Virus record (IMG/VR): IMGVR_UViG_3300037087_000760
Span: 124,001 to 188,000 of that record
Direction: 5' to 3' (one strand)
Length of the DNA: 64,000 nucleotides
Shown: in pieces, positions 3,559-32,741 of the stretch
Numbering within the stretch: position 1 is the stretch's first letter
Layout of the letters: each line of letters starts with the position of its first letter
Made by a program: the position numbers and the translations under genes
The notes under the pieces: generated by a model
Told to the model about the DNA's origin: nothing
The model's input: only the letters and a program-made list of their open reading frames with translations
Databases searched by the model: none

Positions 3559-4987
3559 TTTTCTTTTCTTTCTCTTTGTGCCTTTCGTTATTAACCATCT
3601 TTTGAATAAATTGAGCTTTATTCCTGAAAACTCTCACAATAAATTTATGTCTATCCTGATTTTTAGGGACCATAGTATCAACTAAGTGAATCAGATAGTT
3701 GGTAATTTCATCATCATTTGAATGTGATTTCATCGAATCGGTTTCAGATACTACTTCCCATATTTCTTTATCATTTTCTTTGGTACTATTTGGGAACACC
3801 CCCGTATTTTTCTGTTTACAATGATAAGTATAACCAGAGTAGTAGACCATATCATCTATTTCATATTCCCATTCTTCAATCCATTCTGAACACATGGATT
3901 TAAGGAACTTAACGATATTTTCAATATGTATTTTCTCTAAAGTTTCAAGAGGAATAGCTTTCAAATTATTCATAAGTTCAGTTGTACGAGCCCTATTGAA
4001 TGTAATAACATCCTCTTTTACTTCATCCCATCTTTCATAAATATCTTTTATACTGACCTGAACAGTATCATTACAGTATCTTACAAATTCTTGAAGTGAA
4101 GATCCTACACATCCAGTTCCAACTGTTTGAAAATTGATAGAAGAAACAACAGTAGCTAAATCTGGATTCTTTCCAAAGACAGTTAAGACATAATCAGAAA
4201 GATGTGTCCAACTACGAGCGGTAGCATATTGAAGAGTACCATCGGCGGGTGGTTTATAAATTTCGTCAGGATGACTAACGATATAATCCACTAACACATC
4301 CCAACAATGTTCTCTTGCGTATTCTCTTGCCCATTCATCAGCTGTTAATTCGTGTTCGAGGATAATAAGACGATTTGAAAGAGCTAAATCCATTTCTTCG
4401 ACTTCTGTTTTATCCATTTCACCGTAATTACCACTAGCCATCCAAAAAACATTCTTATTGAATTGAAAATTACTTCCAATTCTTTTTTCATTTAACAACT
4501 GGAGAGCTGCGTTACGAACCCTGATATCACAACGGTTTAATTCTTCGACATGAATAATAGATGGTGTAGTATTTGCTTTTATTGCCCAATCTGGGACAGC
4601 GAAACTTAAACTATCAATGTCATCTGAATTCAATACGATCAGATATTTCTTTTTTACTTTTTCAAATTCATCTGGAGTAATTAGTCCAGCCTGAACTAAT
4701 TGACTAAATCTGAGAATCTGTTCAAGTACATTTTTTAAAACTGGATAACTTCCTAAATCAGTTTCATCCTTATCAGATAATCGAAGATCAATATATTGAA
4801 TTCCTAAATGTCTTTCTTTTTGAGGATCTTCATCATCCCACCATATAATTTTTCGACATATTGCTTCTCCCATGGCTGATTTAGCTGATCCGGGAATACC
4901 CTGAAGGTATAATACTAATCCAGATCGCATTATATCGAAATACATTAATTGTAAAGGGGATAAATTAGATAGATCAAATTTTATCAT
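3551..4987 (-). CDS. MoxR-like AAA+ ATPase (partner of DUF2201/VWA protein)
   Basis: Walker A variant GIPGSAKS, IDLRLS, Walker B variant HVEELNR, ASGN sensor, ALSNR, ATARSW. Confidence 0.8.
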   Translation of the reverse strand: MIKFDLSNLSPLQLMYFDIMRSGLVLYLQGIPGSAKSAMGEAICRKIIWWDDEDPQKERHLGIQYIDLRLSDKDETDLGSYPVLKNVLEQILRFSQLVQAGLITPDEFEKVKKKYLIVLNSDDIDSLSFAVPDWAIKANTTPSIIHVEELNRCDIRVRNAALQLLNEKRIGSNFQFNKNVFWMASGNYGEMDKTEVEEMDLALSNRLIILEHELTADEWAREYAREHCWDVLVDYIVSHPDEIYKPPADGTLQYATARSWTHLSDYVLTVFGKNPDLATVVSSINFQTVGTGCVGSSLQEFVRYCNDTVQVSIKDIYERWDEVKEDVITFNRARTTELMNNLKAIPLETLEKIHIENIVKFLKSMCSEWIEEWEYEIDDMVYYSGYTYHCKQKNTGVFPNSTKENDKEIWEVVSETDSMKSHSNDDEITNYLIHLVDTMVPKNQDRHKFIVRVFRNKAQFIQKMVNNERHKEKEKKTK

Positions 4988-26858: not shown

Positions 26859-27844
26859 TTTTTTTATTCAATAATATTTCTTATATTTGAGGAAATAAGA
26901 AAATTATGAAGATAAGAATTCAAGTGATTGAAAATAGTAATGAGTCACTATCAATATCCTATACTTTACAGAAACTAACCTTAGTTGGTTGGGTTAATTT
27001 ACAATTATCTGATGTCTGGAAAGAAAAACTTCCCTATTTAGATGGAATTTCACCCATCCGATTCTTCGGAAAGGCCGGGAGTAGTTGTACTGATTCAGAA
27101 AAAGCTAAAACAGTCAAGACTTTTTTGAATAAATCCAAATATCTTGATGATTCTATGTACGAACTAATTTTTGGTTATAAACCTATACATAAGAAAGTTA
27201 GTTATCTCTATTAAGATGAAAAAAGAACCAATTCTTATTACAGAAGATGGTGTACCATACTATGATGAAAATAAGTTGGTCTGGGATACACATGATTTTT
27301 CCTCTGGTGATCCTGCTATAATAGTTAATCCTACATTTTTAGATCAAACACCTGTAAAATATGCTAAAAATATTGATCGAATGTTTTTTCATAGTAAGAA
27401 AAAAGCATTGGAATATATGAAAGATAACATAAGATTTTTAGCTTTGACTGACATTGATAAACTATCAAATGGTATTAATGAAGGAAATATAATTATCAAT
27501 AGAAAAGATTTAATAAAATTACTCAGAAAAAGAATAAACGATGAAAACTGTTAGTATACCAGCTAATGTTCATTTACCCAAGGTCGAAGTCGAAATCGAT
27601 CCACTTGATGTCTTAAAAGAATTAGAGGAAGAATTTTTAGATAAATATGGATGGATTGAAAAAAAAGGAAAGAAATATTTTTTAATGTATCCAGAACTCA
27701 GCTTTGATGAAAAGAGTTATCAAGTACGTCAAGTATCTACGAATGAAGTGAAATTTATTGATGCTATTCATACGATGCAAACTTTTTTACAAGAAAAAAA
27801 TAAGAAATCAAAATCAAAACCAAAATCTTAACAAAAAACTCACA

Positions 27845-29890
27845 ATGAAAAAACTCGCAATTATTTTTATGTCATTACTATTTGTAGTAATGGTTGGTTA
27901 TTCTCAGAAATTCAATCCTGATTCGGGATACAGATTAACAAAGGATACCTTACAATTAAATGAGGTTACTATCAGTTCCTTTCTTCCATACCAAGCAACA
28001 ACCTTGATGCCAATCACTTTTAAGAATTTATATAAAGCTGATTTGGGATTGAAAAATTATGGTCAAGAACCAAGTAGGATTTTAAATACCACTCCATCTA
28101 TAACCACTTATTCGGAATCAGGTGGTGATTGGGGTTATTCTTATATAAGATTAAGAGGTATTGATCAAACCAGAATAAACACCACTCTTAATGGTGTTCC
28201 AATGAATGAACCAGAGGATCAAGGATGTTATTTCTCAAATTATCCTGATTTTCTTCAGTCTGTTGATATGTTACAAATACAGAGAGGAACAGGAATGACT
28301 AAAAATGGGTCAGCCAGTTATGTTGGAAGTATGAATTTCGAATCATATAAACCATCTACATCAAGTGTAGGGGCCTTTTTCGGAGCTGGATCATTCGGAT
28401 CAACCAAAATTTCAATGAATACTGAACAAAATTGGAAAAAAGGTGGGTTATATGCTTCATTTTCTGACCTTGAAACAAAAGGTTATAAATATCATTCTGG
28501 TAATCATTCCAGAAGTGCTTTTCTTGTGGGAAATTATACAACTGGAAGAAATCAATTTAAATTTGTTGGTTTTGCTGGTGAACAAATGAACCAATTAGCT
28601 TGGTTGGGTGTTCCAATAGATAGTATCAATTTAGACCGTAGATATAACACTTGTACCACTCGTGAAAATGATCATTTTAATCAATATCATTTGCAATTTC
28701 ATCACACCTATATTATAGATAATAAATCCAGATTTAATTATTGTGTCTATTATAATTATTTGAATGGTTTCTATACTTATGATGGAATTCATAATGGAAC
28801 ATGGGATACTATATCATCTGGTAAATATAATTTATATGCATATCATCTTTATTCTAACTTCTTAGGTACTAATGTAAACTATTATATTAAACTTGGACCA
28901 TTGGATTTTTATACAGGGGTTAATGGTTCTAAGTATGATAGGGAACATCATGGAACAACAAATGATATCTATACTTACAAAAATACAGGATTCAGAGATG
29001 ATTTAAGTGGATTTGTTAAAGGTATTTTAAACGCTGGAAGTTTCAATTTTTATGGTGATGTTCAATATCGTTATACTACTTTTGTTTATAATGGTGATGT
29101 TTATCTACAACATTTTATTTGGAATTTTCTGAATTATAGTGTTGGTGTTGAATATAAAGCCAAACACAACATCCTTTATTATTCCATTGGTAAAACACAT
29201 CGAGAACCTATTCGTAATGATATGTTTGGTGGTTATGATAATCTATCGTCTGATCCTCTTGGAAAAGCTGTTTTTTATGATTTAAAACCAGAATCAGTAT
29301 TGGATCAGGAATTTGGCTATCGTTATATCATAGGAAATTTAAATTTGAACATCAATCTATATTATATGTTATTCAAAGATGAATTAGTATTAACGGGAGC
29401 TTACGGGCCAACAGGATTACCACTTCATGAAAATGTAGATAACAGTTTCAGGTCAGGATTTGAATTCGATTTTAAATACAGATGGAAATTTGGATTAACA
29501 TTACTTCAAAATGTATCCTATAATTATAGTAAAATAACATGGACAAATAAACAAACAACTCCTGTCTTAACACCAGAATGGCTATCAAATACTGAAGTAA
29601 ATTATAATTACAAATGGTTTATAATCGGTTTGAGTGGTAGGTATCAAAGTTGGTCTTATATTGATCAAAGAAACAACTTCACCATTCCAAGTTTTTATAC
29701 ACTGAATGCTATGATTGGATTAAAATGGTCATGGGGAGAATGGGATATTTATTTGAATAACATAACTGATCAAAAAACTTTATCGAGTGGTATGGTTTCT
29801 GGTGATGGGACTCCTTATAATCAATTTATTCCTCTGTATTATGTGAATGCACCATTTAATTTCTTTACTGGACTTAAATTTAAAATGTAA
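27845..29890 (+). CDS. TonB-dependent outer-membrane receptor (vitamin-uptake type)
   Basis: Signal peptide ending SQ; plug IRLRGIDQTRINTTLNGVPMNEPE, LQIQRG; aromatic beta-barrel ending GLKFKM. Confidence 0.9.
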   Translation: MKKLAIIFMSLLFVVMVGYSQKFNPDSGYRLTKDTLQLNEVTISSFLPYQATTLMPITFKNLYKADLGLKNYGQEPSRILNTTPSITTYSESGGDWGYSYIRLRGIDQTRINTTLNGVPMNEPEDQGCYFSNYPDFLQSVDMLQIQRGTGMTKNGSASYVGSMNFESYKPSTSSVGAFFGAGSFGSTKISMNTEQNWKKGGLYASFSDLETKGYKYHSGNHSRSAFLVGNYTTGRNQFKFVGFAGEQMNQLAWLGVPIDSINLDRRYNTCTTRENDHFNQYHLQFHHTYIIDNKSRFNYCVYYNYLNGFYTYDGIHNGTWDTISSGKYNLYAYHLYSNFLGTNVNYYIKLGPLDFYTGVNGSKYDREHHGTTNDIYTYKNTGFRDDLSGFVKGILNAGSFNFYGDVQYRYTTFVYNGDVYLQHFIWNFLNYSVGVEYKAKHNILYYSIGKTHREPIRNDMFGGYDNLSSDPLGKAVFYDLKPESVLDQEFGYRYIIGNLNLNINLYYMLFKDELVLTGAYGPTGLPLHENVDNSFRSGFEFDFKYRWKFGLTLLQNVSYNYSKITWTNKQTTPVLTPEWLSNTEVNYNYKWFIIGLSGRYQSWSYIDQRNNFTIPSFYTLNAMIGLKWSWGEWDIYLNNITDQKTLSSGMVSGDGTPYNQFIPLYYVNAPFNFFTGLKFKM

Positions 29891-30408
29891 TGAAAACGGA
29901 AGAAGCCATTAAAATTATAAAGTTAAATGAAAGAAAACCGAGATTCACCAAGAAAGGTGGTTTTATGGTTTCTTTTGAGAAAAAAGAGGGTCATATTTTA
30001 GCATCTCATCATTTTCCTGATAAACATACTGGTGAACCATTGATTCGAACTGAGGAAGAAGCTTGGAATTTAGCTAAAAGATTTGCCACATCTACTGATG
30101 ATTCATATGTAAATATATATGTAACCGATAGTGAATGGCGTCCAGTAAAAGGATATTACGAAAAAACAATCAGGAGATATTAATGATGGAGAAAACATGG
30201 AAAGATCTCAACGAAGATCAAAAAATAAAATACAAAGAATATTGTGATAACAAATATGGTAAAACCGTTGTATTTTGTGAAACAGGTGAGCCTTTGTATT
30301 TTGATGAAAATATAAATTTAAGAATGTCATGGGTCGTTATCGAATTACTCTTTGGTAATTTAGAACCATTATTTTAATTGAAACTTCGTTCTAAAAATAT
30401 ATATAATT

Positions 30409-30492
30409 GGCTGGGTGGCGGAACTGGTAGACGCGCGGGACTTAAAATCCCGTTCCTGTATGGGAGTGTGGGTTCAATTCCCATCCCGGCTA
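30409..30492 (+). tRNA. tRNA-Leu(TAA), long variable arm
   Basis: Full cloverleaf, loop CT-TAA-AA. Confidence 0.93.
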
Positions 30493-30493
30493 C

Positions 30494-30604
30494 AATCTCT
30501 GACATGGCACCCACTCTAAGGGACCAATACGAAAAGTTTGGGAGCTATCTGGAACAAGGCCGGAAGGCAGAAGGGATGGTAGTGGGGAGCCTAAATCAGA
30601 GATT
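30494..30604 (+). ncRNA. Structured ~111-nt RNA with SRP helix-8-like GCC-GGAA-GGC hairpin
   Basis: 9-bp terminal stem AATCTCTGA/TCAGAGATT; CCCACT/AGTGGG; GCTATC/GATGGT; CAAG-GCC-GGAA-GGC-AGAA. Confidence 0.4.
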
Positions 30605-30669
30605 TTTTAAATATTTTTATCAAATAATTTTTTTTATTCAGAAATTTGACATAATTTTGTAGTCCCTTG

Positions 30670-31072
30670 TTTGATAAAGAGTGTGAGTCAAAGGAAACAA
30701 TAAAGATTTTTAAGTCTTGAGTTCCGGCTGTAAAGGTAGCATACTCTTGTTCTTTGATTTAATGATGAAAAAGTTAGTTCTCGAAGATTAACGGCACCAG
30801 AAAGGTGTACGACACTCGTTGAGAGTGTACGATACTAAGAGGTGTATCAGAATCTTTGAAACGGGTATAAACCCGTTTGGGGAGGCGAGCAGCCGAACCA
30901 AATACAAACTCATATAACTCCGGCCCGCAAGTCGGATGAAAATTGAGTATTCAGTTTTGCGGAACTGTTGGGATAGCTAACATAAATTTATTTGTTGTGG
31001 TGATAAGTCCAAATCGATATGATTTAGTTCAGGAAGTATCGGACTAATTTGGTGAAAAACAAACACAACAAC
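30670..31072 (+). ncRNA. Candidate large ornate ncRNA
   Basis: No ORF of 60 aa or more, GC-elevated, dense hairpins (AAACGGGT/ACCCGTTT, ACACTC/GAGTGT, TGTTGTG/CACAACA), crossing helices at the 5' end. Confidence 0.5.
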
Positions 31073-31074
31073 AC

Positions 31075-31136
31075 GGACAGGTAGCTTAAGAGAGAGCCGT
31101 ATCAACGAGACGGTGGTTTAAACCCACCTCTGTCCA
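31075..31136 (+). ncRNA. 62-nt tRNA-like element lacking a normal anticodon arm
   Basis: Acceptor GGACAGG/TCTGTCC+A, D stem GCT/AGC, T arm GGTGG-TTTAAAC-CCACC; only 14 nt between D and T arms. Confidence 0.6.
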
Positions 31137-31309
31137 CAATATAAAGGGTGCAAAACTTGTTTTAACAATGTTTTTCGGGACGGTTTAGTTAAATCGGTTA
31201 TTCTTAACCAGCCCTTCTTAGAAAATTAGAAGAATCTGATACCCGATGGTGTATAGGATACCCGAAGTACAAGGGATGATCGGTGGCAACACAATCAACT
31301 TCTTTTAAC

Positions 31310-31441
31310 GAGTGTATTAGTGTAACGAAAGCACAGGCTGTTTGATGTTAGAGTAAGTTTTAGACGGCGGTCTTGGTCATTAGATTGACAAAACTGAAAT
31401 ATCGTAGGTCGGATGAGGGTTCAAATCCCTCATACATTCCA
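31310..31441 (+). ncRNA. ~130-nt tRNA-like element with expanded anticodon and variable regions
   Basis: GAGTGTAT/ATACATTC acceptor, D stem GTG/CAC, T arm GAGGG-TTCAAAT-CCCTC, GCTGTTT/AGACGGC stem closing an oversized loop. Confidence 0.55.
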
Positions 31442-31713
31442 AAAGGTGATGTGATGGAATAGTTTTTTCCATCCTGTTTTAAGGAGAGAACATTTGAGGA
31501 TAAAGCGAGCCTACATCACAAACAGGATCACCAAATAAGGTGAGGGAAACAAAGTAGAGTACCTTTTCTTCGGATTGAGGCCTTCGGGCCGAGGGAAATG
31601 ACCTGTTCTCCCTCAACTTTTTTAAAAAACGAAATTAAATTAAACTTTTTGAAAAAAAAGTTCTAAAATAGAAAAAAGAGACTTTATAAGTTAAATATAT
31701 AATAAAAAAACAT

Positions 31714-31784
31714 ATCCAGTAGGAACGTAAGTTCCGTTTTGGGACGCTCAGCGACCCAGAGGGGAAAACTCCCCGCAACTGGAT
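31714..31784 (+). promoter_or_regulatory. Four-way-junction RNA at the 5' end of the rplL-tRNA transcript
   Basis: ATCCAGT/ACTGGAT enclosing GGAAC-GTAA-GTTCC, TGGG..CCCA and GGGG..CCCC hairpins. Confidence 0.5.
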
Positions 31785-31888
31785 AAACTTTTTGAAATGA
31801 TTATGACACAGAACATCCAAAATATGATTATTAATCAGATACCCGGTAAAAATACCGATTGGATGAACTTTGTCTATAACGAATATAG

Positions 31889-31921
31889 AAAAAACCCAAT
31901 CGGAAACGATTGGGTTTTTTT
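31889..31921 (+). terminator. Intrinsic terminator of the attenuator
   Basis: ACCCAATCG-GAAA-CGATTGGGT followed by a T-run. Confidence 0.9.
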
Positions 31922-31952
31922 GTTTTATATGTCCACCATAGTTTTTAACTGG

Positions 31953-31965
31953 TGTTCTTTGAAAT
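31953..31965 (+). promoter_or_regulatory. boxA-like antitermination site
   Basis: TGTTCTTTGAAAT; copies at 32414-32426 (+) and 45905-45917 (-). Confidence 0.6.
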
Positions 31966-32044
31966 AATGATAAATCATATTCGGATTATAAGTTCAAAAC
32001 TGATAATCTGAACATAAAATGTAAATAAAAATAAATTAGAAACT

Positions 32045-32422
32045 ATGGAAGATTTAAAAAAATTAGCGGATGATCTGAGTAATCTCACCGTATTAGAGTG
32101 TTACCAGTTAGCTAAGATAATGAAAGAAGAATACGGAATAGAATCAAATACAAAAATTGTTGGTGTGAATGTATCACCAGTTCCAACTAAGGTAGTTGAA
32201 ATTGAAAAAACAAGTTTTGATGTGATTCTAAAATCAGCAGGAACAACCAACAAACTTGGTGTTATCAAATCCATCAAAGAAATGACAGGACAAAGTTTAT
32301 TGGAAATTAAGAATCTCGTTGATAATGCACCAGCGAAACTAAAAGAAAATGTAAGTAAAGATGAAGCTATGTCTTTACTGAATATTCTGAAAGAATTAGG
32401 TGCAGAAATTGAAGTTCTTTGA
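32045..32422 (+). CDS. rplL: Ribosomal protein bL12 (L7/L12)
   Basis: LSNLTVLE, EKTSFDVILK, KLGVIKSIKEMTG, LVDNAP, LKELGAEIEV. Confidence 0.93.
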   Translation: MEDLKKLADDLSNLTVLECYQLAKIMKEEYGIESNTKIVGVNVSPVPTKVVEIEKTSFDVILKSAGTTNKLGVIKSIKEMTGQSLLEIKNLVDNAPAKLKENVSKDEAMSLLNILKELGAEIEVL

Positions 32423-32449
32423 AAATAATAAAAAATGTAGTAGCGAGTT

Positions 32450-32546
32450 TGAGTGTTACTTCGTAGCTCAACAGTCGAGCATCAATCAGTTAAATTGAAA
32501 GTTGTGGGTGCGATTCCCACCGAACCCGAAAGGGTAATATCACTCA
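32450..32546 (+). ncRNA. tRNA-Asn(GTT)-like RNA with a hairpin inserted in the acceptor stem
   Basis: D arm GCTC/GAGC, loop CA-GTT-AA, T arm GTGGG/CCCAC; acceptor TTCG/CGAA interrupted by CCC-GAAA-GGG then TGAGTG/CACTCA. Confidence 0.65.
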
Positions 32547-32571
32547 ATGATTATCTCTACATTTTTTTAAT

Positions 32572-32649
32572 GGGTGTGTAGCTCAGTAGCGTTAGAGCGC
32601 GACACTGATAATGTCGAGGTCGTAGGTTCAAGTCCTACCATACCCACCA
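32572..32649 (+). tRNA. tRNA-Ile(GAT)
   Basis: Canonical cloverleaf with encoded CCA. Confidence 0.96.
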
Positions 32650-32659
32650 AAAATAACAC

Positions 32660-32741
32660 TGTGTCGTACGCAGCCGATCCTGATAAGATCGAGAACTTGT
32701 AACTGGTGTTGAAAATGTGGGTTCGAATCCCACCGGCACAA
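32660..32741 (+). tRNA. D-armless tRNA-Ile(GAT) with 25-nt variable region
   Basis: TGTGTCG/CGGCACA+A; CGATC-CTGATAA-GATCG; canonical T arm; only 8 nt between acceptor and anticodon stems. Confidence 0.65.

What the first reader, a model, noticed from the sequence alone, without database searches (positions are those of the whole stretch)
30670..31072. Candidate large ornate ncRNA in a tRNA island
About 400 nt with no ORF and a dense series of hairpins. At the 5' end, helices AAGAGTGTG:CATACTCTT and GTCAAAGG:TTCTTTGAT cross (pseudoknot or switch). GOLLD and ROOL RNAs occupy such phage tRNA-adjacent positions, but I cannot match this sequence to either from memory.
Basis: inference. Interest (0 to 1): 0.65.

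Follow-up and report, generated by a model that had tools for sequence, protein, structure and literature searches.

The report
New structured RNA in huge-phage tRNA island
The flagged 400 bases are a real folded non-coding RNA with its own promoter, kept by evolution in a small clade of giant (over 700 kb) Bacteroidota phages; it matches no known RNA family and its function is unknown.

Summary
The region is ORF-free and folds much better than shuffled sequence on the + strand (z -4.1). Three diverged homologs were found upstream of the phage L7/L12 gene, 53-60% identical to the window in the core. They share a promoter-like block ending at 30664 and a roughly 230-nt core (30749-30981). The helices keep pairing while their sequences change, and two hairpin loops, CCGCAA and TTGCGG, are invariant and complementary. 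Rfam gives no match to GOLLD, ROOL, raiA, tmRNA or group I intron, so this is a new family and not a member of those. The RNA is the first module of a roughly 960-nt non-coding unit (30665-31626). That unit also holds a tRNA-derived element with a stunted anticodon arm (31075-31137), a second tRNA-like element and a conserved tail. I infer that tRNA-processing enzymes release the RNA and that it acts as a folded particle. No expression data could be obtained. The family is rare, with four sequence types, and is absent from several close relatives.

The parts
30617..30664 (+). Conserved promoter-like block (...TCAAATAATTTTTTTTAT...AAATTTGACATAATTTTGTAGTC). It contains TAATTTTG (30652-30659), which fits the Bacteroidota -7 box TAnnTTTG. 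The inferred transcription start is at about 30662-30668.
   Evidence: 96% identical copy elsewhere in the same genome. Aligned copies lie upstream of tRNA arrays in the own genome. The block is conserved in L029 and L113 up to GTAGTC, after which the sequences diverge. The -7 consensus is from established knowledge of Bacteroides promoters.
30677..30748 (+).
   Evidence: A helix sits at the same place in all four homologs with unrelated sequences. Window: AAGAGTGTG/CATACTCTT. L029: (AAAGT-T-)AATCTCT/AGAGATT(ACTTT). L113: GTAGAT-T-GTGTG/CACATATCTAC. L125: GATTGA..TGG..TCTCT/AGAGA..CCA..TCAATC. Window, L029 and L113 were verified by script. The L125 helix and the outer AAAGT/ACTTT extension of L029 were read by eye from the sequences.
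30749..30772 (+). J1/2: conserved, apparently single-stranded linker GTTCTTTGAtTTAATGA... Its first 9 bases are a motif that recurs 3' of tRNA genes in this genome.
   Evidence: Invariant or near-invariant in four homologs. No partner is conserved across homologs. GTTCTTTGA occurs 6 times in the window against 1.3 expected. About half of the 14 genome copies lie just 3' of tRNA or RNA modules.
30773..30981 (+). Conserved core, a multi-helix junction closed by P2 (30773-30777 + 30779-30782 with 30970-30973 + 30977-30981). P3: 30783-30789 with 30851-30857. P4: 30860-30866 with 30871-30877, plus a window-only hairpin up to 30902. P5: 30908-30912 with 30944-30948. P5a: 30919-30924 with 30931-30936. 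P6: 30952-30956 with 30963-30967.
   Evidence: Helices verified in three sequences by script. RNAalifold on four sequences recovers P2, P5, P5a and P6, with 11 predicted pairs changed on both sides; some of those lie in the poorly aligned P3 apex. The count of structure pairs: 85% of cells paired, 8 pairs changed on both sides, 0-1 of 500 shuffles as high, and slid controls far lower. CM R1 scores 110-151 bits on the four homologs only. P2 and the base of P3 are invariant, so they are predicted and not proven.
30925..30962 (+). Candidate kissing-loop pair: loop of P5a, CCGCAA (30925-30930), and loop of P6, TTGCGG (30957-30962).
   Evidence: Both loops are invariant in all four homologs while their stems change. 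They are the only complementary pair among 6-mers conserved in all four cores. There is no covariation because they are invariant, so the pairing is inferred.
30804..30846 (+). Swappable apex of P3: GGTGTACGAC - hairpin - GTACGATAC - N5 - GGTGTA.
   Evidence: Present in the window and L029 with compensatory changes in the hairpin (ACACTC/GAGTGT against ACCCC/GGGGT). It is replaced by unrelated hairpins in L113 and L125.
30990..31072 (+). Accessory long hairpin (M4).
   Evidence: Strongly similar to L113 4098-4177 (nhmmer E 1e-13), where it sits directly after the promoter instead of after the core. L029 and L125 carry other hairpins at this position. The module has been shuffled.
31075..31137 (+). 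TLS1: tRNA-derived element. Acceptor GGACAGG/TCTGTCC, D arm, T arm GGTGG-TTTAAAC-CCACC and discriminator A, but only a 3-bp mini 'anticodon' arm. It is the presumed 3' processing signal for the upstream RNA.
   Evidence: Folds as a cloverleaf (z -3.15). The acceptor covaries: L113 GGACAAG/CTTGTCC followed by ACCA, L125 GGATAGG/CCTATCC. The L125 copy scores 44.6 bits on Rfam tRNA. The window copy gives no tRNA hit at E<=10 and no ARAGORN call. The 3' part is deleted in L029.
31138..31308 (+). Spacer module between the two tRNA-like elements. It holds the conserved ACCCGAAGTACAAGGG hairpin.
   Evidence: Partly conserved with L029, L113 and L125. Not analysed further.
31309..31440 (+). TLS2: tRNA-like element with normal acceptor, D and T arms and a roughly 60-nt insertion where the anticodon region should be.
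   Evidence: Rfam tRNA 30.5 bits. ARAGORN calls it only when an intron is allowed. Homologs are L029 5594-5720 (35.4 bits) and L125, where the insertion is about 150 nt.
31441..31626 (+). Conserved non-coding tail module. It ends in a hairpin followed by a T-run (GAGGGA...TCCCTC AAC TTTTTT), the likely end of the transcription unit.
   Evidence: nhmmer match of window 31421-31627 to L113 4866-5090, E 6e-18. Three-way alignment with L125 shows the conserved complementary pair CCTGTTT/AAACAGG.

Best explanation
Window 30665-31074 encodes a genuine, selectively maintained structured non-coding RNA of a previously undescribed family.

Shown:
- It sits behind a conserved promoter-like block.
- It has a P1 helix whose sequence is completely different in each homolog.
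- It has a conserved single-stranded linker.
- It has a roughly 210-nt multi-helix junction (P2-P6) whose peripheral hairpins are freely exchanged, while two hairpin loops (CCGCAA and TTGCGG) stay invariant and complementary.

Inferred:
- It is transcribed by host RNA polymerase, as the first module of a roughly 960-nt non-coding 'RNA operon', from the promoter class that also lies upstream of tRNA arrays in this phage.
- It is cut out by the tRNA-processing machinery. RNase P would act at the 5' side of the tRNA-derived element TLS1 at 31075, much as tRNAs punctuate precursors.
- It then works as a folded RNA particle, held together within one molecule or between molecules by the loop-loop pairing, and not as a cis-regulator.

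Given its place among more than 20 phage tRNAs and a phage L7/L12 gene, I think the most likely role is in the phage's takeover of host translation or tRNA metabolism. That last step is a guess.
For: - ORF-free, with strand-specific excess folding.
- Three diverged homologs found by walking phage L12 homologs: L029/L030, L113/L112 and L125. Core identity to the window is 53-60%.
- P1, P4, P5, P5a and P6 keep pairing with changed sequences.
- 8 pairs with double changes, against 3.3 +/- 1.5 in shuffles and 0-5 in slid controls.
- The only conserved complementary 6-mers in the core are the two loops.
- The promoter block is conserved to the base and also lies upstream of tRNA arrays.
- No ORF lies between the promoter and the T-run at about 31626.
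- TLS1 has a covarying acceptor stem and conserved D and T arms but a non-conserved, stunted anticodon arm. This is the pattern expected of a processing or recognition signal and not of a decoding tRNA.
- No Rfam family matches in the window, L029 or L125. The same tool did detect the group I intron in a relative, which serves as a positive control.
Against:
- Only four sequence types exist. Three of them are 74-83% alike, so the covariation rests mostly on window-versus-rest comparisons.
- P2, the base of P3 and the loop-loop pairing are invariant and therefore unproven.
- The RNA is missing upstream of L12 in related phages (L004, L026, L115, L116 and the 735-kb LR756501), so it is accessory.
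- TLS1 is half deleted in L029.
- One assembly of the window's own phage (L018) lacks 49 nt, including the 3' strands of P6 and P2.
- Modules are shuffled between phages, which could also fit selfish or decaying elements.
Confidence: 0.6

Rival explanations
1. One large ornate RNA. The whole 30665-31626 stretch (about 960 nt) functions as a single multi-domain RNA of the GOLLD/ROOL type: a 5' conserved core, tRNA-like domains in a variable linker and a 3' conserved tail. It may self-assemble through intermolecular kissing of the CCGCAA and TTGCGG loops.
For: One promoter and one terminator-like end with no ORF between them. Both the core and the tail are conserved while the middle is variable. 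GOLLD has a variable and a conserved half, sometimes carries tRNAs in its linker, and lies near phage tRNA islands. GOLLD and ROOL oligomerise through kissing loops (bioRxiv 10.1101/2024.12.08.627333).
Against: L029 lacks the tail module and L113 lacks an intact TLS2, so the parts are not always together. No conserved complementarity was found between core and tail. tRNA-like elements with full acceptor and T arms are normally cleaved out by RNase P and RNase Z. No Rfam GOLLD or ROOL match.
Confidence: 0.17
2. Evolutionary debris. The region is a graveyard of decaying tRNA genes, intron remnants and small mobile hairpins. It is transcribed, if at all, only as spacer of a tRNA operon, and its structure is inherited and not selected.
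For: TLS1 and TLS2 are degenerate tRNAs. Modules are shuffled, swapped and deleted between close relatives. The region is absent from several relatives.
Against: Stems change by compensatory double substitutions while loops and junction sequences stay invariant at 53-60% overall identity. That pattern indicates purifying selection on a fold. The core shows no tRNA, intron or other Rfam similarity even at E<=10.
Confidence: 0.12
3. Cis-regulatory leader. The structure is a riboswitch- or attenuator-like leader, or an L10/L12-type autoregulatory rRNA mimic, that controls the downstream RNAs or the L7/L12 gene.
For: It lies upstream of, and on the same strand as, the phage L7/L12 gene in all four loci. 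In the window, GCACC can pair with either of two GGTGT copies (seen in the sequence).
Against: The first ORF is 1.4 kb downstream. It is separated by two tRNA-like elements, a terminator-like T-run at about 31626, a second promoter-like block (31640-31710) and a strong terminator at 31888-31921. No L10_leader or riboswitch match. The alternative-pairing apex is absent in L113 and L125.
Confidence: 0.06
4. Hidden small protein gene(s) on either strand.
For: Stop-free stretches of 35-62 codons exist in the region.
Against: None is conserved in position. Homologs differ by 1-nt and other non-triplet indels and by whole-hairpin replacements. Substitutions are paired across stems instead of falling at third codon positions.
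Confidence: 0.03

Closest known systems
GOLLD and ROOL RNAs (Rfam; large ornate phage/prophage RNAs)
   Same: Large, ORF-free, multi-helix RNA encoded by a phage next to a tRNA island. It has a conserved domain plus a variable domain, tRNA-like elements in or next to the RNA, and conserved complementary hairpin loops. Function is unknown (context from bioRxiv 10.1101/2024.12.08.627333).
   Different: No match to either covariance model at gathering score or at E<=10. The conserved core is much smaller (about 230 nt, against about 580 nt for ROOL and over 800 nt for GOLLD, sizes partly from my own knowledge). Distribution is very narrow, four sequence types in one clade of huge Bacteroidota phages. 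Oligomerisation was not tested.
Stable non-tRNA RNAs of the phage T4 tRNA operon (species 1 and 2 / rnaC, rnaD) - from established knowledge, not tested here
   Same: Non-coding RNAs of unknown function co-transcribed with phage tRNAs and released by the tRNA-processing machinery.
   Different: The T4 RNAs are about 120-140 nt and unrelated in sequence. Here the RNA is about 400 nt and is flanked by degenerate tRNA-like elements, not functional tRNAs.
tRNA-like 3' processing signals (MALAT1/mascRNA type) and tRNA punctuation - from established knowledge
   Same: A cloverleaf with intact acceptor and T arms but no usable anticodon arm lies directly 3' of a long ncRNA. It could recruit RNase P to define the 3' end of that RNA.
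   Different: Known examples are eukaryotic or mitochondrial. Cleavage is not shown here. The element is partly deleted in one homolog (L029).
tmRNA and YrlA (tRNA-mimic ncRNAs also found in phages)
   Same: tRNA-like domains combined with extra structured RNA. Both occur in phage genomes.
   Different: ARAGORN finds no tmRNA. The Rfam tmRNA hit is 18 bits against a 47-bit threshold and lies on TLS2, not on the flagged RNA. The YrlA hit is 18 bits against 69 and lies on a real tRNA. TLS1 has A3-U70, not the G3-U70 needed for alanine charging, and no tag reading frame was seen.

Membership tests
GOLLD RNA (Rfam) | Match to the family covariance model (conserved 3' domain with its pseudoknots) | tested here: not met
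   cmscan of the whole window at gathering score and of 30300-32700 at E<=10 gave no GOLLD hit. The same holds for homologs L029 and L125.
GOLLD RNA (Rfam) | Phage or prophage location near tRNA genes, sometimes with tRNA inside the RNA | tested here: met
   21 tRNA genes in the window. tRNA-Leu lies 170 nt upstream, and tRNA-like elements sit at 31075 and 31309.
ROOL RNA (Rfam) | Match to the family covariance model | tested here: not met
   No hit at gathering score or at E<=10.
ROOL/GOLLD kind (RNA-only multimeric cages) | Homo-oligomerisation through intermolecular kissing loops and A-minor contacts | not testable with these tools
   Conserved complementary loops exist, but sequence alone cannot tell whether they pair within one molecule or between molecules.
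raiA, OLE, HEARO and other large Rfam ncRNAs | Match to the family covariance model | tested here: not met
   None of the 4227 Rfam models matches 30494-31300 at E<=10, apart from a chance-level sroD hit of 16 bits.
tRNA (for TLS1, 31075-31137) | Cloverleaf with a 5-bp anticodon stem and 7-nt loop; match to RF00005 | tested here: not met
   The window copy gives no RF00005 hit at E<=10 and no ARAGORN call. The anticodon arm is a 3-bp stem with a 4-nt loop. The L125 copy reaches 44.6 bits, which shows tRNA ancestry.
tmRNA | tRNA-like domain with G3-U70, pseudoknots and a tag reading frame; ARAGORN or Rfam detection | tested here: not met
   ARAGORN finds no tmRNA. RF00023 gives 18.2 bits against a 47-bit threshold, on TLS2 only.
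Group I intron | Match to RF00028; insertion inside a host gene (for example the tRNA-Leu anticodon loop) | tested here: not met
   No RF00028 hit in the window region, and tRNA-Leu at 30409-30493 is uninterrupted. Positive control: the relative LR756501 has an RF00028 hit of 56.6 bits inside its tRNA-Leu(UAA).
Riboswitch / cis-regulatory leader | Lies in the 5' UTR directly upstream of the regulated ORF on the same transcript | tested here: not met
   The nearest downstream ORF above 60 aa starts at 32045, beyond a terminator-like T-run, a second promoter-like block and a strong terminator.

The most novel reading that the evidence does not exclude
The whole 30665-31626 unit is a new class of large, multi-domain 'ornate' phage RNA with embedded tRNA-like domains. 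It would be specific to phages with genomes over 700 kb. Its invariant CCGCAA/TTGCGG loops would pair between molecules to build an RNA-only assembly, as in ROOL and GOLLD cages, and that assembly would act on tRNAs or ribosomes during infection.
Probability: 0.12. Interest if true: 0.85.

Novelty: new variant of a known kind. Interest (0 to 1): 0.55.

Why it matters
Large structured RNAs next to phage tRNA islands (GOLLD, ROOL) are among the most striking RNAs without a known function, and they were recently shown to build RNA-only cages. This is an independent, much smaller family in the same genomic niche, found in the largest phages known. It has a compact core of about 230 nt, a clear candidate tertiary contact and natural module-swap variants. 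That gives a tractable new case for asking what such RNAs do. It also shows that degenerate tRNAs may be retained as processing signals in phage RNA operons.

Tried and rejected
- Rfam at gathering score and at E<=10 on the window, L029 and L125: only tRNAs and chance-level hits.
- blastn of the region against 50,697 phage records: only tRNA or chance matches.
- IMG/VR scans with conserved blocks or with neighbouring proteins: chance hits only, apart from one L12 relative (L004) that lacks the RNA.
- Metagenome scan with the GTACGA motif: two coding chance hits.
- GTDB genome scans with two core patterns: nothing, or chance hits.
- CM R1 on the 735-kb phage LR756501, on G001 and on other L12 loci: nothing credible. 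The best hit, 18.6 bits, lacks P5a.
- nhmmer of the core against the phage's own 211-kb record: no paralog.
- A conserved partner for the J1/2 linker: none found.
- A resemblance of the reverse complement of J1/2 to the 23S rRNA GTPase-centre sequence, recalled from memory, was dropped because the matching bases are not the conserved ones.
- A resemblance of the CCGCAA and TTGCGG loops to the group I intron P and Q elements was dropped. The order is reversed, and RF00028 does not match although it works on the control.
- One genome search failed and was repeated successfully.
- My early note that the promoter copy in L003 precedes a protein gene was wrong. The ATG there opens only a 6-codon frame, and tRNA-Glu genes follow.

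Full report
**Setting.** The window is bases 124001-188000 of a 211-kb IMG/VR virus record. The same phage occurs on contigs of up to 597 kb and 736 kb. It has about 30% G+C. It is related to the 735-kb 'uncultured phage' LR756501. The nearest cellular relatives of its ribosomal protein L7/L12 gene (32045-32422) are from Bacteroidota at about 55% identity, so the host is probably a member of that phylum. The window carries 21 tRNA genes.

**The observation.** Between tRNA-Leu(UAA) (30409-30493) and the L7/L12 gene there is no ORF above 61 aa on either strand, and G+C rises to 37%. The flagged 30660-31080 folds to -115.7 kcal/mol on the + strand, against -94.6 +/- 5.2 for shuffles (z -4.06). 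The - strand gives z -1.96.

**Known families.** Rfam found only tRNAs in the window at gathering thresholds. At E<=10 on 30300-32700, nothing better than chance-level hits fell on 30494-31300. There was no GOLLD, ROOL, raiA, tmRNA, RNase P or group I intron match. The method does work on this kind of DNA: the relative LR756501 has its tRNA-Leu(UAA) split by about 200 nt, and that insert scores 56.6 bits as a group I intron.

**Homologs.**
- DNA searches of phage records, IMG/VR, JGI metagenomes and GTDB genomes gave nothing real.
- Ten contigs encoding the identical L12 protein all carry the identical RNA region. One of them (L018) has a 49-nt deletion at about 30961-31009.
- Walking through the phage L12 clade and fetching the encoding contigs gave three diverged homologs. 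These are L029/L030, L113/L112 and L125.
- In the core the window is 53-60% identical to them. They are 74-83% identical to each other.
- Other relatives lack the RNA upstream of L12: L004, L026, L115, L116 and LR756501.

**Anatomy (+ strand).**
1. *Promoter-like block, 30617-30664.* It is conserved to the base in L029 and L113, up to ...TTTGACATAnnTTTGTAGTC, and the sequences diverge immediately afterwards. TAATTTTG fits the Bacteroidota -7 box TAnnTTTG (established knowledge). Other copies in the phage's own genome lie upstream of tRNA arrays. This looks like a stable-RNA promoter, with the start at about 30665 (inferred).
2. *P1.* P1 is present in all four sequences with unrelated sequences (for three; by eye for L125 and for the outer part of L029).
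3. *Linker.* The linker GTTCTTTGAtTTAATGA is conserved, with no partner conserved across homologs.
4. *Core, 30773-30981.* P2 closes a junction that holds the following helices:
   - P3: invariant base CGAAG/CTTTG, with an apex that is freely exchanged.
   - P4: AACGGGT/ACCCGTT in the window, TCCGACC/GGTCGGA in L029, AGGTC/GGCCT in L125.
   - P5: ACTCA/TGAGT in the window, AACCTC/GAGATT in L029, AACCTT/AAGATT in L113.
   - P5a: TCCGGC/GTCGGA in the window against CCTCGT/ACGGGG in L029, with invariant loop CCGCAA.
   - P6: CAGTT/AACTG in the window against CAGCT/GGCTG in L029, with a loop containing invariant TTGCGG.
5. *Accessory hairpin, 30990-31072.* It is strongly similar to a hairpin in L113 that sits right after the promoter instead.

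**Statistics.** A covariance model of P4-P6 scores 110-151 bits on the four homologs and nothing credible elsewhere. On the model-guided four-sequence alignment:
- 84.8% of cells pair, against 73.4 +/- 2.2 in shuffles (0 of 500 as high).
- 8 pairs changed on both sides, against 3.3 +/- 1.5 (1 of 500 as high).
- Sliding the partners by 1-3 columns drops pairing to 30-50% (three-sequence version).

The window row is mis-registered in P4 and P6 in that alignment, so these numbers understate the support. The correct registers were checked by script. RNAalifold on an independent MAFFT alignment recovers P2, P5, P5a and P6, with 11 predicted pairs changed on both sides; some of those lie in the poorly aligned P3 apex. 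Among 6-mers conserved in all four cores, the only complementary pair is CCGCAA/TTGCGG. Because P5a and P6 are themselves supported, that pairing would be a kissing-loop or pseudoknot contact. It is invariant, so it is inferred and not shown. With only four sequences, three of them close, all these statistics are indicative and not conclusive.

**What follows the RNA.**
- *TLS1, 31075-31137.* This is a cloverleaf with a 7-bp acceptor, a D arm and a T arm, but only a 3-bp 'anticodon' arm. Its acceptor covaries in L113, where it is followed by ACCA, and in L125. Its D and T arms are conserved and its anticodon region is not. The L125 copy still scores 44.6 bits as tRNA. L029 has lost the 3' part.
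- *Spacer, TLS2 and tail.* Next come a spacer; TLS2 (31309-31440), which is tRNA-like with a 60-nt insertion; and a tail module conserved in L113 and L125 that ends in a hairpin plus T-run at about 31626.
- *Separate downstream unit.* A second, different promoter-like repeat (31640-31710; many copies in relatives), a strong terminator (31888-31921) and the L12 gene form a separate unit.

**Interpretation.** The flagged stretch is a real structured ncRNA of a new family. It is the first module of a roughly 960-nt non-coding unit. I infer that RNase P cutting at TLS1 releases it, and that it acts as a folded particle connected with the translation and tRNA functions that surround it. An alternative I cannot exclude is that the whole unit is one large GOLLD-like RNA with tRNA-like domains in its linker, and that the loops pair between molecules (context). 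Against strong claims stand the lack of expression data, the few homologs, the patchy distribution, the natural deletions and the module shuffling.

**Verdict.** This is not GOLLD or ROOL. It is a new family of the same general kind, and its function is unknown.

Noticed in passing
L005 1927-2205 (LR756501.1, about 190.2-190.5 kb): In the related 735-kb phage, tRNA-Leu(UAA) is split at the anticodon by about 200 nt. The insert scores 56.6 bits as a group I intron (RF00028). This is the classic tRNA-Leu(UAA) intron site, here in a huge phage. The window's own tRNA-Leu is intact.
   Followed up: partly
window 31714-31786 (and L113 5398-5470): A very stable 4-way-junction, cloverleaf-like element of about 70 nt (z -6.1) lies just after the second promoter-like block. 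It is flanked by the 14-nt direct repeat TAAACTTTTTGAAA. It is present in the window and L113, where the third hairpin covaries, and absent from L029, L125 and L004. It could be a small mobile or insertable structured RNA. No Rfam match.
   Followed up: partly
window 546, 26154(-), 30749, 31954, 32414, 45906(-); 14 copies in G000: The 9-mer GTTCTTTGA is about 4-fold over-represented (6 copies against 1.3 expected). About half of its genome copies lie a few bases 3' of tRNA genes, tRNA-like elements or RNA modules. It may be a processing or recognition signal of the phage's stable-RNA operons.
   Followed up: partly
window 31309-31440; L029 5594-5720; L125 about 782-958: TLS2 is a tRNA-like gene with good acceptor, D and T arms (T arm covaries). 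The anticodon region carries an insertion of 57-60 nt, or about 150 nt in L125. It is too short for a group I intron, and ARAGORN reads a TTA 'anticodon' only when an intron is allowed. Its nature is unknown.
   Followed up: partly
window 31441-31626: A conserved non-coding tail module, shared with L113 and L125, with its own conserved helix (CCTGTTT/AAACAGG) and a terminator-like end. It may be a second novel structured RNA.
   Followed up: partly
window 30495-30608; L029 about 4722-4817: Directly after tRNA-Leu there is a roughly 110-nt element closed by an 8-bp stem (ATCTCTGA/TCAGAGAT) and followed by a T-run. It looks like an unusually large, structured terminator. An analogous element with a different sequence follows tRNA-Leu in L029.
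   Followed up: no
window 30804-30846; L029 5019-5059: The motif GGTGTACGAC - hairpin - GTACGATAC - N5 - GGTGTA is conserved between the window and L029, which are not each other's closest relatives, while its inner hairpin covaries. It is absent from L113 and L125. It behaves as an exchangeable RNA module, perhaps a protein-binding site.
   Followed up: partly
L018 (JGI 3300037091), equivalent to window about 30961-31009: One assembly of the same phage lacks 49 nt, removing the 3' strands of P6 and P2. It is either a natural defective variant or an assembly error. All nine other contigs examined are 100% identical over the parts they cover.
   Followed up: partly
window 27758-29890: A 710-aa ORF with TonB-dependent receptor Plug and beta-barrel domains is encoded by the phage. 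It is syntenic with the RNA locus in the window, L029 and L112. An outer-membrane receptor gene is unusual in a phage.
   Followed up: no
window 32045-32422: The phage encodes ribosomal protein L7/L12. It belongs to a distinct clade of about 47 phage-type L12 proteins at 60-100% identity, well separated from Bacteroidota L12 at about 55%.
   Followed up: partly
whole record: The identical L12 protein lies on contigs of up to 736,551 bp and 597,284 bp. This phage is therefore as large as the largest phage genomes described. IMG/VR labels the 211-kb record 'provirus', which is probably a misclassification.
   Followed up: no
window 31640-31710: A second promoter-like repeat (TAAACTTTTTGAAAAAAAAGTTCTAAAATAGAAAAAAGAGACTTTATAAGTTAAATATATAA) has many copies in this phage, in G001 and in LR756501. 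In G000 (about 73.7 kb, - strand) it directly follows a copy of the first promoter block, upstream of four tRNA-Glu genes.
   Followed up: partly
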